Shown: positions 17,527 to 17,852, counted from the whole stretch's first letter. The stretch: 63,135 nt of DNA, filler included, from Reticulomyxa filosa (GCA_000512085.1; 19 parts of 19 records of this genome joined end to end with filler, not necessarily neighbours in it), one strand, 5' to 3'. Program-made: numbers and translations. The notes: generated by a model from the letters alone, not told the origin.

Positions 17527-17852
17527 AGGGACGTAACTTATGGGTAAAGCCCGCACCGAAAGTAGTTGCATGTTGGGTCAGCCAGGCCCAGGCACTGCCC
17601 TGGTAGAGACGCCAGTGGGGTACTGGGAGTGGTGATGCCTGAAAACATCAGATTGGGTTGTGCCAAGGGGCTGCGACCAGGGTGTTGTAGTTTCCACGCA
17701 CGGTTACAATATACCCTGCCCTTGGTGTGGCCACACATCTCTTGGCATATGGTTTGCTCTAATAGAGACGTTAGCTGGGGCCATATGTTGGGAGGTGTGC
17801 AACATGCAATTACTTTCACCGCGGTCAAGTGGGTTCGAGTCCCGCCGTCTCT
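17527..17852 (+). ncRNA. tRNA-framed large structured RNA (tRNA-Ala-like shell with a ~260-nt structured insert in place of the anticodon loop)
   Basis: Acceptor stem AGGGACG/CGTCTCT with G3:U70. D-arm and A-box-like TAACTTATGGGTAAAGC. T-arm GTGGG-TTCGAGT-CCCGC (B-box). 18-bp helix 17558-17575/17800-17817. TTTT terminator at 17859-17862. Confidence 0.8.

What the first reader, a model, noticed from the sequence alone, without database searches (positions are those of the whole stretch)
17527..17852. Giant tRNA-framed structured RNA with tmRNA-like architecture in a eukaryotic contig
Seen in sequence: a roughly 55% GC island in very AT-rich DNA whose two ends form a tRNA shell. Acceptor stem AGGGACG (17527-33)/CGTCTCT (17846-52) with G3:U70. 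U8 A9 and a D-arm CTT-ATGGGTA-AAG. A perfect T-arm/B-box GTGGG-TTCGAGT-CCCGC (17829-45). TTTT lies 6 nt downstream. The anticodon stem CCGC/GCGG (17551-54/17821-24) does not close a 7-nt loop. It continues through an ACC/ACC internal loop into an 18-bp helix GAAAGTAGTTGCATGTTG/CAACATGCAATTACTTTC, which encloses 224 nt. Established: G3:U70 is the alanyl-tRNA synthetase determinant; a tRNA-like domain with a long helix replacing the anticodon arm and a 300-400 nt length is the tmRNA plan; tmRNA is known from bacteria and some organelles, not as a nuclear gene. Differences from tmRNA: the D-stem is kept, position 1-72 is A-U, the discriminator is U, and no CCA is encoded. Inference: a Pol III-transcribed, tRNA-Ala-derived ncRNA of a class I do not recognise, or an unusual structured SINE.
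Basis: partly seen in the sequence, partly recalled or inferred. Interest (0 to 1): 0.92.

Follow-up and report, generated by a model that had tools for sequence, protein, structure and literature searches.

The report
Interrupted tRNA-Glu-like gene, giant structured insert
A foraminiferan (Reticulomyxa filosa) nuclear contig carries a tRNA-Glu-like gene whose anticodon loop is split by a 257-base, GC-rich insert that folds only on the sense strand; this is far larger than any usual tRNA intron, sits in an unusual place, is not a tmRNA, and its fate is still unknown.

Summary
At 17527-17852 a tRNA frame (7-bp acceptor stem with G3.U70, D arm, perfect T arm/B box, T4 six nt downstream) encloses a 50-56% GC island in roughly 30% GC DNA. 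An 18-bp helix closes 224 nt. The contig is Reticulomyxa filosa ASPP01022434.1.

The 3' strand of the long helix carries a perfect tRNA-Glu anticodon loop, CUUUCAC (17813-19). It made no such call in 2.1 Mb of shuffles, but the score is borderline.

The insert is an RNA-level structure on the sense strand. It has 20 G.U pairs among 98 and no A.C mismatches. The interior z-score is -3.0 on + and -0.3 on -. Two paralogous hairpins share the loop AGAGAC.

No Rfam family matches and ARAGORN finds no tmRNA. There is no bulge-helix-bulge motif, no group I hallmarks, and no relatives in any searchable collection. The tRNA body is degenerate: no N26, A31.C39, A10.C25, U73.

Best reading: a tRNA-Glu-derived Pol III gene with a giant non-canonical intervening sequence. 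Whether it is spliced, persists as a tRNA-framed RNA, or is a mobile insertion is unresolved. Copy number and expression could not be tested.

The parts
17527..17533 (+). Acceptor stem, 5' strand AGGGACG (A1-U72, G3.U70)
   Evidence: 7 bp with 17846-52. A17526-U17853 could add an eighth pair.
17534..17550 (+). U8 A9 plus D arm (ACUU-AUGGGUA-AAGC; 3 bp plus an A10.C25 mismatch; G18 G19 present). A-box-like. No nucleotide at position 26.
   Evidence: ARAGORN drawing.
17551..17556 (+). Anticodon stem 5' strand CCGC, then A31 (mismatched with C39) and C32. This is the end of the 5' exon.
   Evidence: ARAGORN junction 'cgcac-Intron-tttca'.
17557..17813 (+). 257-nt intervening sequence (equivalently 17556-17812, because of the repeated C). 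About 53% G+C (138 of the 260 nt 17558-17817) and structured on the + strand only.
17558..17575 (+). 5' strand of the 18-bp closing helix. Its first 5 nt, GAAAG, pair with anticodon-loop nt 32-36.
   Evidence: (I7).
17577..17636 (+). Hairpin A. Apical stem CUGGU/GCCAG, loop AGAGAC (17605-10).
   Evidence: (D1).
17639..17651 (+). Small hairpin CUGA-AAACA-UCAG.
17656..17732 (+). Hairpin B: a 14-bp helix with 5 G.U, an 8-nt bulge, and an 8-bp helix.
17734..17799 (+). Hairpin C: a 22-bp helix with 8 G.U, apical stem CUAAU/GUUAG, loop AGAGAC (17764-69). Paralogue of hairpin A.
   Evidence: (p about 0.01).
17800..17817 (+). 3' strand of the 18-bp closing helix. Its last 5 nt are anticodon-loop nt 32-36.
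17813..17819 (+). Anticodon loop CUUUCAC (U33 at 17814; anticodon UUC at 17815-17; A37; C38).
17820..17828 (+). C39, the anticodon stem 3' strand GCGG, and a 4-nt variable loop UCAA.
17829..17845 (+). T arm GUGGG-UUCGAGU-CCCGC. B box GGTTCGAGTCC at 17832-42.
   Evidence: the only part the Rfam tRNA model aligns.
17846..17853 (+). Acceptor 3' strand CGUCUCU plus discriminator U73. No CCA is encoded.
17859..17862 (+). First T4 run, a candidate Pol III terminator. More T runs follow.
   Evidence: Expected often by chance in this AT-rich flank.

Best explanation
This is a nuclear, Pol III-type gene of Reticulomyxa filosa derived from a tRNA-Glu(UUC) gene. Its anticodon loop is interrupted after nt 31/32 (equivalently 32/33) by a 257-nt, GC-rich intervening sequence that behaves as an RNA structure on the sense strand.

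Inferred working:
- Internal A-box-like and B-box elements drive transcription of a precursor of about 330 nt that ends at the T runs just downstream.
- The intact acceptor/T-arm minihelix allows tRNA-type end processing (RNase P, RNase Z, CCA addition).
- The insert projects from a 4-bp anticodon stem through an ACC/ACC internal loop. An 18-bp helix closes it and locks away anticodon-loop nt 32-36. The insert carries four hairpins, two of them paralogous with the same AGAGAC loop.

Shown: the anatomy, the tRNA-Glu loop, the sense-strand-specific structure, and the absence of known splice motifs.

Inferred: transcription and processing.

Unresolved: the fate of the insert. Of the 0.55 I give this reading, about 0.3 goes to the RNA staying unspliced or poorly spliced, as a tRNA-framed RNA that cannot decode. 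About 0.25 goes to excision as a giant non-canonical tRNA intron by a rule not yet described.
For: - It makes no call in 2.1 Mb of shuffles.
- The loop CUUUCAC is the usual tRNA-Glu(UUC) loop (my recollection of yeast and E. coli tRNA-Glu, not tested here). The only blastn hits of the element in the phage set are tRNA-Glu genes, over the 3' half (weak, E = 0.3).
- The cloverleaf plus insert is within 0.9 kcal/mol of the minimum free energy.
- Structure is specific to the sense strand. Full length: -145.2 kcal/mol (z -5.2) on + against -112.5 (z -2.3) on -. Interior 224 nt: z -2.97 on + against -0.33 on -.
- The insert has 20 G.U among 98 pairs, and I saw no A.C 1x1 mismatch when I inspected the helices.
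- Hairpins A and C are paralogues with an identical loop and an apical stem GG/CC versus AA/UU.
- The island is 50-56% GC in a genome of about 30% GC, as expected for constrained structural RNA.
- There are no protein relatives of its ORFs.
Against: - This is a single locus. No paralogue or orthologue could be retrieved, and there are no expression data (none was listed).
- The ARAGORN score is borderline: the call is lost at -ps103.
- The tRNA body is imperfect: no N26, A31.C39, A10.C25, and U73. G3.U70 would clash with Glu identity.
- The position is not 37/38, and no bulge-helix-bulge forms at the predicted splice sites. No known enzyme rule removes the insert.
- The A-box to B-box spacing of about 290 bp is far beyond normal tRNA genes.
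- The closing helix is nearly perfect (17 of 18 Watson-Crick) and flanked by ACC on both sides. That also looks like terminal inverted repeats plus a target-site duplication.
- The excess of G.U could partly reflect transcription-linked C-to-T bias rather than selection.
Confidence: 0.55

Rival explanations
1. A DNA-level insertion of a non-autonomous cut-and-paste element (MITE-like; 18-bp terminal inverted repeats GAAAGTAGTTGCATGTTG, 3-bp duplication ACC) into a tRNA-like pseudogene. On this reading the locus is dead and the tRNA-Glu loop is accidental.
For: - The terminal helix is 17 of 18 Watson-Crick, much cleaner than the interior helices (1 G.U in 18 bp against 13 in 36 bp).
- ACC lies directly outside both arms.
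- The tRNA body has several defects.
- R. filosa is known to be repeat-rich (my recollection, not tested here).
Against: - Removing the element plus one ACC leaves CCGC-ACC-GCGG, which has no anticodon loop.
- The perfect CUUUCAC loop would have to arise by chance from the element end plus the duplication. My rough estimate of that chance is a few percent.
- The interior is structured on one strand only, with 20 G.U and no A.C. DNA-level palindromes do not predict this.
- The ACC identity alone has a 1 in 64 chance.
- No other copy was found in about 46 kb of other R. filosa contigs. No ORF relatives exist in the protein collections. Both are weak tests.
Confidence: 0.22
2. A tmRNA-like, alanine-charged rescue RNA. 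The tRNA-like domain would be alanylated through G3.U70 and the insert would provide a tag-encoding or ribosome-binding body.
For: - G3.U70 and G2-C71 are present in an intact acceptor/T-arm minihelix.
- The overall size and the 'long helix replaces the anticodon arm' plan resemble tmRNA.
Against: - ARAGORN's tmRNA search finds nothing here.
- No Rfam tmRNA model hits, even at E up to 10 on the 381-nt region.
- The D stem is kept, the discriminator is U rather than A, and position 1-72 is A-U.
- No pseudoknot series or tag frame was found.
- The anticodon loop is tRNA-Glu-like.
- To my knowledge, no nuclear tmRNA/SmpB system is known.
Confidence: 0.03
3. A member of a known self-splicing or catalytic RNA class (a group I intron in a tRNA anticodon loop, as in bacteria and plastids) or another known Pol III RNA (SRP, RNase P/MRP, telomerase RNA) that has been misread.
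For: - The size (257 nt) and the location in an anticodon loop match the small tRNA group I introns.
- The motif GUAGAGAC resembles the group I 'R' element (my recollection, not tested here).
Against: - There is no Rfam hit to Intron_gpI, SRP, RNase P/MRP or any other family at E up to 10.
- The 5' exon does not end in U and the insert does not end in G.
- The predicted architecture is four long hairpins on a closing helix, not a P3-P9 core.
- No GNRA/GNAR loops, no AGCA motif and no telomere-template-like run were seen by eye.
Confidence: 0.04
4. An assembly artefact, or a chance juxtaposition of tRNA-like halves around unrelated GC-rich sequence in a fragmented draft assembly.
For: The contig is only 5.25 kb, from a draft assembly. 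No reads could be laid.
Against: - The two tRNA halves are in register and pair with each other.
- The insert ends pair over 18 bp, and that pairing includes anticodon-loop nucleotides.
- ARAGORN makes 0 calls in 2.1 Mb of shuffles.
- A chimeric join would not create this nested complementarity.
Confidence: 0.03

Closest known systems
Non-canonical (ectopic) tRNA introns of Archaea, Cyanidioschyzon merolae and nucleomorphs
   Same: An intervening sequence lies inside a tRNA gene away from 37/38, and it pairs with exon nucleotides around the anticodon. Positions such as 29/30 and 30/31 are documented in archaea (PMC4090602).
   Different: Those introns are defined by a bulge-helix-bulge motif or its relaxed forms, and most are tens of nt long. 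Here no such motif forms at the splice sites, the insert is 257 nt, and the host is a rhizarian nuclear genome.
Canonical eukaryotic nuclear tRNA introns (37/38, Sen endonuclease ruler mechanism)
   Same: It is a Pol III tRNA gene with no CCA encoded, and the intron pairs with the anticodon.
   Different: The position is 31/32-32/33 rather than 37/38. The 3' splice site lies inside an uninterrupted helix. The length is several-fold above the usual range; about 64 nt is already called unusually long in Ostreococcus (PMC13578239).
tmRNA
   Same: A tRNA-like acceptor/T-arm domain with G3.U70 frames a body of about 260 nt through a long helix.
   Different: The D stem is kept, the discriminator is U73, and 1-72 is A-U. 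There is no tag frame, no pseudoknots and no model hit. The anticodon loop is tRNA-Glu-like and the setting is a eukaryotic nucleus.
Archaeal pre-tRNA-Trp intron that nests a box C/D RNA, and animal tRNA-intron circular RNAs (tricRNAs)
   Same: These are structured, potentially functional RNAs housed in a tRNA intron. Here the intron elements (AGAGACG loops) are complementary to the host tRNA's acceptor 3' strand.
   Different: No C/D or H/ACA boxes were recognised, Rfam gave no hit, and the excision motif is absent.
Engineered 'tRNA scaffold' RNAs and natural tRNA-like processing signals (mascRNA-type)
   Same: A structured RNA replaces or extends the anticodon arm of an otherwise processable tRNA frame.
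   Different: No natural example with a 260-nt cargo inside the anticodon arm is known to me. This comparison rests on my recollection and was not tested.
MITEs and tRNA-gene-targeting DNA transposons (for example the Dada superfamily)
   Same: Terminal inverted repeats plus a short flanking direct repeat lie inside a small-RNA gene.
   Different: The interior structure is strand-specific, copy number is unknown, and the pre-insertion site would lack an anticodon loop. Dada duplications are 6-7 bp (my recollection).

Membership tests
tRNA gene (cloverleaf) | 7-bp acceptor stem, D arm with G18 G19, 5-bp T stem with a TΨC-type loop, and a 7-nt anticodon loop with U33 and R37 | tested here: met
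   ARAGORN -i calls tRNA-Glu(UUC), loop CUUUCAC, with 0 calls in 2.1 Mb of shuffles. The score is borderline: the call is lost at -ps103. Defects: no N26, A31.C39, A10.C25.
tRNA gene (cloverleaf) | Detected without allowing an intron, or by the Rfam tRNA model | tested here: not met
   Default ARAGORN finds 0 genes. RF00005 aligns only the T arm, at 15 bits against a gathering score of 29.
Canonical eukaryotic tRNA intron | Intron between nt 37 and 38 | tested here: not met
   The junction is 'cgcac-Intron-tttca', that is 31/32 or 32/33.
Archaeal-type / ectopic tRNA intron | Bulge-helix-bulge at the splice sites: 3-nt bulges separated by a 4-bp helix | tested here: not met
   An exhaustive scan gave 42 weak candidates, none placing both cuts at 17555/6 and 17812/3. 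ACC/ACC is a symmetric 3x3 loop, and the 3' site lies in a continuous helix.
tmRNA | tRNA-Ala-like domain with G3.U70 | tested here: met
   G17529 pairs with U17850.
tmRNA | Tag reading frame, pseudoknots, and recognition by tmRNA detectors or models | tested here: not met
   ARAGORN's tmRNA search finds nothing here. There are no Rfam tmRNA hits at E up to 10.
tmRNA | Reduced D arm, A73 discriminator, SmpB partner | tested here: not met
   The D stem is kept and the discriminator is U17853. SmpB was not testable.
Group I intron | Conserved catalytic core, U at -1, and a terminal G | tested here: not met
   RF00028 gives no hit. The 5' exon ends in C or A, and the insert ends in C or A.
MITE / cut-and-paste transposon | Terminal inverted repeats and a target-site duplication | tested here: inconclusive
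   The 18-nt arms match at 17 of 18 positions and are flanked by ACC/ACC. However, the arms include anticodon-loop nt, and ACC has a 1 in 64 chance of matching.
MITE / cut-and-paste transposon | Many dispersed copies in the genome | not testable with these tools
   No tool holds the R. filosa assembly. There are 0 copies in about 46 kb of other contigs, and no run was listed.
Pol III type 2 gene | A box, B box and a downstream T run | tested here: inconclusive
   The B box GGTTCGAGTCC is perfect, the A box is partial, and T4 lies at +6. The A-B spacing of about 290 bp is atypical, and there are no expression data.

The most novel reading that the evidence does not exclude
The transcript is not spliced. 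It matures into a stable RNA of about 326 nt with a CCA tail and a tRNA frame. In this reading a former tRNA-Glu gene serves only as a Pol III promoter, an end-processing signal and a stabilising scaffold for a 260-nt structured cargo. The cargo carries two identical AGAGAC(G) loops that can pair with the acceptor 3' strand. That would be a natural 'tRNA-scaffold' ncRNA class in a eukaryotic nucleus, possibly chargeable through G3.U70.
Probability: 0.2. Interest if true: 0.85.

Novelty: new variant of a known kind. Interest (0 to 1): 0.55.

Why it matters
If the insert is excised, this would be by far the largest nuclear tRNA intron I know of. It would sit at a non-canonical site without a bulge-helix-bulge, which implies an undescribed recognition rule for tRNA splicing in Foraminifera.

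If it is not excised, it would be a natural example of a structured RNA carried inside a tRNA frame, a design so far known mainly from tmRNA and from engineered scaffolds.

Either outcome bears on how tRNA genes are remodelled into new non-coding RNAs. If it proves to be a mobile insertion in a dead gene, it is ordinary.

Tried and rejected
- **Rfam**, on the whole piece and on the 381-nt region at E up to 10: only chance-level miRNA or lncRNA hits, plus a T-arm-only tRNA hit.
- **Default ARAGORN and its tmRNA mode:** nothing at the locus.
- **ORF translations of the insert:** no Pfam family, no word-sharing relatives, and one marginal repeat-protein hit that I judged to be chance. It is not coding, and no annotated paralogous copies were found.
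- **Sequencing runs:** none was listed, so no reads could be laid. Expression, spliced joints and copy number are untested.
- **blastn against phages and plasmids:** only a 32-nt match to phage tRNA-Glu genes.
- **Metagenome scan with the T-arm/acceptor 21-mer:** three phage or bacterial tRNA-Arg genes, unrelated.
- **Closing-helix 18-mer in viral contigs:** three hits inside phage coding sequence, about the number I would expect by chance (my rough estimate, not computed), with no further similarity.
- **Hairpin motif** in viral contigs and in GTDB genomes: zero hits.
- **About 46 kb of other R. filosa contigs:** no tRNA genes and no copy of the element.
- **Similarity of the interior to the tRNA 5' end and its upstream flank:** not significant (p = 0.78).
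- **Tandem repeats inside the element:** none.
- **SRP, RNase P/MRP, telomerase template, C/D and H/ACA boxes:** considered by eye and rejected for lack of the defining motifs.
- **Joined-exon search:** searching a joined (spliced) exon model was deliberately left out. Only single exons or short native stretches were searched.

Full report
**Source.** The piece 16482-21733 is the complete 5,252-bp contig ASPP01022434.1 of the foraminiferan Reticulomyxa filosa (GCA_000512085.1). Its 365-aa ORF is 100% identical to RFI_25901, a Kelch-motif protein, and the contig was retrieved through that protein. A TPR protein gene lies at the other end. The element sits about 150 bp beyond the 3' end of the Kelch gene, on the opposite strand, in intergenic DNA.

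**Observation.**
- The acceptor stem is AGGGACG/CGTCTCT with G3.U70.
- U8 and A9 are followed by a 3-bp D stem with a GGG-containing loop.
- The T arm is GUGGG-UUCGAGU-CCCGC, with a perfect B box.
- The first T4 run begins 6 nt after the acceptor stem.
- CCGC/GCGG leads through an ACC/ACC 3x3 loop into an 18-bp helix (17 Watson-Crick pairs plus 1 G.U) that encloses 224 nt.
- GC reaches 0.50-0.56 against 0.29-0.34 in the flanks. Seven other R. filosa contigs are about 28-39% GC.
- The whole element folds to -145.2 kcal/mol, z = -5.2. Forcing the cloverleaf pairs costs only 0.9 kcal/mol.

ARAGORN with default settings finds nothing. With introns allowed, at the default score threshold, it calls one gene in the piece: tRNA-Glu(UUC) at 17526-17854, with a 257-nt intron.

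The anticodon loop CUUUCAC lies on the 3' side (17813-19), inside the 3' strand of the long helix. Its nt 32-36 pair with GAAAG at the start of the insert. The junction reads cgcac|intron|tttca. Because of a repeated C, it can be placed at 31/32 or 32/33.

The call is specific, with none in 2.1 Mb of block-shuffled sequence. It is also borderline, since it is lost at 103% of the threshold. The only blastn hits of the element in the phage collection are tRNA-Glu genes, matching the anticodon arm through the T arm (weak, E = 0.3). The frame is therefore tRNA-Glu-derived, not tRNA-Ala-derived.

The body has defects for a working tRNA. It has no nucleotide 26, A31.C39 and A10.C25 mismatches, and a U73 discriminator. 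Its G3.U70 pair is the alanine determinant (established knowledge) and would clash with a Glu anticodon.

**The insert is an RNA-level structure on the sense strand.**
- The minus strand of the same DNA folds 33 kcal/mol worse: -112.5 kcal/mol, z = -2.3.
- For the interior 224 nt alone, z is -2.97 on + and -0.33 on -.
- The insert's predicted fold has 98 pairs, of which 20 are G.U. Helix B has 5 G.U in 14 bp and helix C has 8 in 22 bp. The closing helix has only 1 in 18.
- Inspecting the helices, I found no A.C 1x1 mismatch. A decaying DNA palindrome should show G.T and A.C about equally. This asymmetry points to selection for pairing in the sense RNA. At the least it points to a strand-biased process such as heavy sense transcription.
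- Hairpins A (17577-17636) and C (17734-17799) are paralogues: alignment p is about 0.01 against shuffles, with 31 invariant columns listed.
- They share the apical loop AGAGAC, and their apical stems differ by two double-sided changes, CUGGU/GCCAG versus CUAAU/GUUAG. In an AT-biased genome G-C to A-U is also the neutral end state, so I count this as supporting rather than decisive.

**What it is not.**
- No Rfam family reaches E of 10 or better in 17500-17880, apart from chance miRNA and lncRNA hits and a T-arm-only tRNA hit. This covers tmRNA, group I introns, SRP, RNase P/MRP, snRNAs and ribozymes.
- ARAGORN's tmRNA search is negative at the locus.
- Group I hallmarks (U at -1, terminal G) are absent.
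- The ORFs over the insert have no Pfam family and no relatives.
- An exhaustive scan for bulge-helix-bulge geometry found only weak chance candidates. None places both cuts at the predicted junctions.
- The ACC/ACC loop is symmetric, whereas the motif needs two bulges staggered by 4 bp (definition from PMC4090602). The 3' junction also lies inside an uninterrupted helix.
- The position is not 37/38, so the eukaryotic ruler rule (PMC4090602) does not fit either.

**Search for relatives.**
- No sequencing run was listed, so expression, spliced joints and copy number could not be examined.
- The one metagenome scan, with the T-arm/acceptor 21-mer, returned only phage or bacterial tRNA-Arg genes.
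- The closing-helix 18-mer gave three hits in phage ORFs, roughly what I would expect by chance.
- The hairpin motif gave none in viral contigs or in GTDB genomes.
- About 46 kb of other R. filosa contigs, fetched through paralogous Kelch proteins, hold no tRNA gene and no copy of the element. That only excludes a very high copy number.
- I did not search a joined exon-exon model. Only native stretches were used.

**Interpretation.** The robust statement is that this is a tRNA-Glu(UUC)-derived, Pol III-type gene whose anticodon loop is interrupted by a 257-nt intervening sequence structured on the sense strand. I give this RNA-level reading about 0.55.

Within that 0.55 there are two possible fates.
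- **(a) The RNA is not removed, or is removed poorly (about 0.3).**
  - It persists as a tRNA-framed RNA of about 326 nt.
  - This is favoured because the parts needed for transcription and end processing are intact: the B box/T arm and the acceptor stem.
  - The parts needed for decoding and tertiary folding are degenerate, and no known splice signal is present.
- **(b) The insert is a giant non-canonical intron (about 0.25).**
  - It would be excised by an undescribed rule.
  - This is favoured by the perfectly preserved tRNA-Glu loop and by the classic pairing between intron and anticodon.

The main rival, at about 0.22, is a MITE-like DNA insertion. The closing helix is nearly perfect and flanked by ACC on both sides, as terminal inverted repeats plus a 3-bp target duplication would be. 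Against it:
- Removing the element leaves no anticodon loop.
- The exact Glu loop would be an accident.
- The interior structure is strand-specific.

The tmRNA-like reading gets about 0.03, a known ribozyme or ncRNA about 0.04, and an assembly artefact about 0.03.

**A further oddity, unexplained.** The heptamer AGAGACG occurs only twice in the 5.2-kb piece, both times spanning the apical loops of hairpins A and C. It is the exact Watson-Crick complement of the acceptor 3' strand CGUCUCU, which occurs once. The duplex energy is -9.0 kcal/mol, against -8.1 for the real acceptor stem with its G.U. The chance of one such match in 255 nt is about 0.02. It could allow an alternative fold or pairing in trans with the tRNA 3' end, but I could not test this.

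**Novelty and score.** As it stands, this is a new variant of a known kind: an interrupted tRNA gene, unusual in insert size, position, lack of a splice motif and internal structure. It rests on one locus, with no expression or comparative data. Interest is 0.55. It would rise sharply if a stable or spliced transcript were shown, and would fall to ordinary if the insert proves to be a dispersed repeat.

Noticed in passing
window 17605-17611 and 17764-17770 versus 17846-17852: AGAGACG occurs only twice in the 5.2-kb piece, both times spanning the apical loops of paralogous hairpins A and C. It is the exact complement of the tRNA acceptor 3' strand CGUCUCU. In hairpin A the match extends to UGGU-AGAGACG, which is complementary to CGUCUCU-A-CCA. 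This could allow alternative pairing with a tRNA 3' end.
   Followed up: partly
window 17771-17780 (and 17612-17620): The sequence after each AGAGACG (UUAGCUGGGG; CCAGUGGGG) resembles a tRNA A box/D-loop start. The second copy lies about 60 bp upstream of the B box, the usual A-B spacing. That raises the possibility of an internal Pol III start. No inner tRNA could be folded.
   Followed up: partly
window 18004-20328 (- strand): Kelch-motif protein gene RFI_25901 (549 aa, spliced), one of a large R. filosa Kelch family. Its nearest non-R. filosa relative is a 34%-identical protein from JGI metagenomes (P0002).
   Followed up: partly
window 20739-21561 (- strand in the record; TPR ORFs on + at 20685-21122 and 21259-21690): A 230-aa gene is annotated, with faint TPR hits. 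The ORFs I translated on the + strand also show weak TPR motifs, so the strand and model of this gene may deserve a check.
   Followed up: no
window 21128-21210 and 21669-21733: (TA)n/(TATACA)n-type microsatellites give weak, chance-level hits to miRNA families in Rfam. The contig ends inside one of them.
   Followed up: no
window 18524-18644: At a relaxed threshold (-ps90) ARAGORN -i also calls a 'tRNA-Phe(GAA)' with a 25-nt intron in DNA of about 22-25% GC. This is probably a false positive.
   Followed up: no
L004 (Ga0316201_10019277) 1549-5636: This metagenome contig, hit by chance, carries a dense array of 28 tRNA genes, typical of a large phage or a bacterial tRNA island. It is unrelated to the finding.
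   Followed up: no
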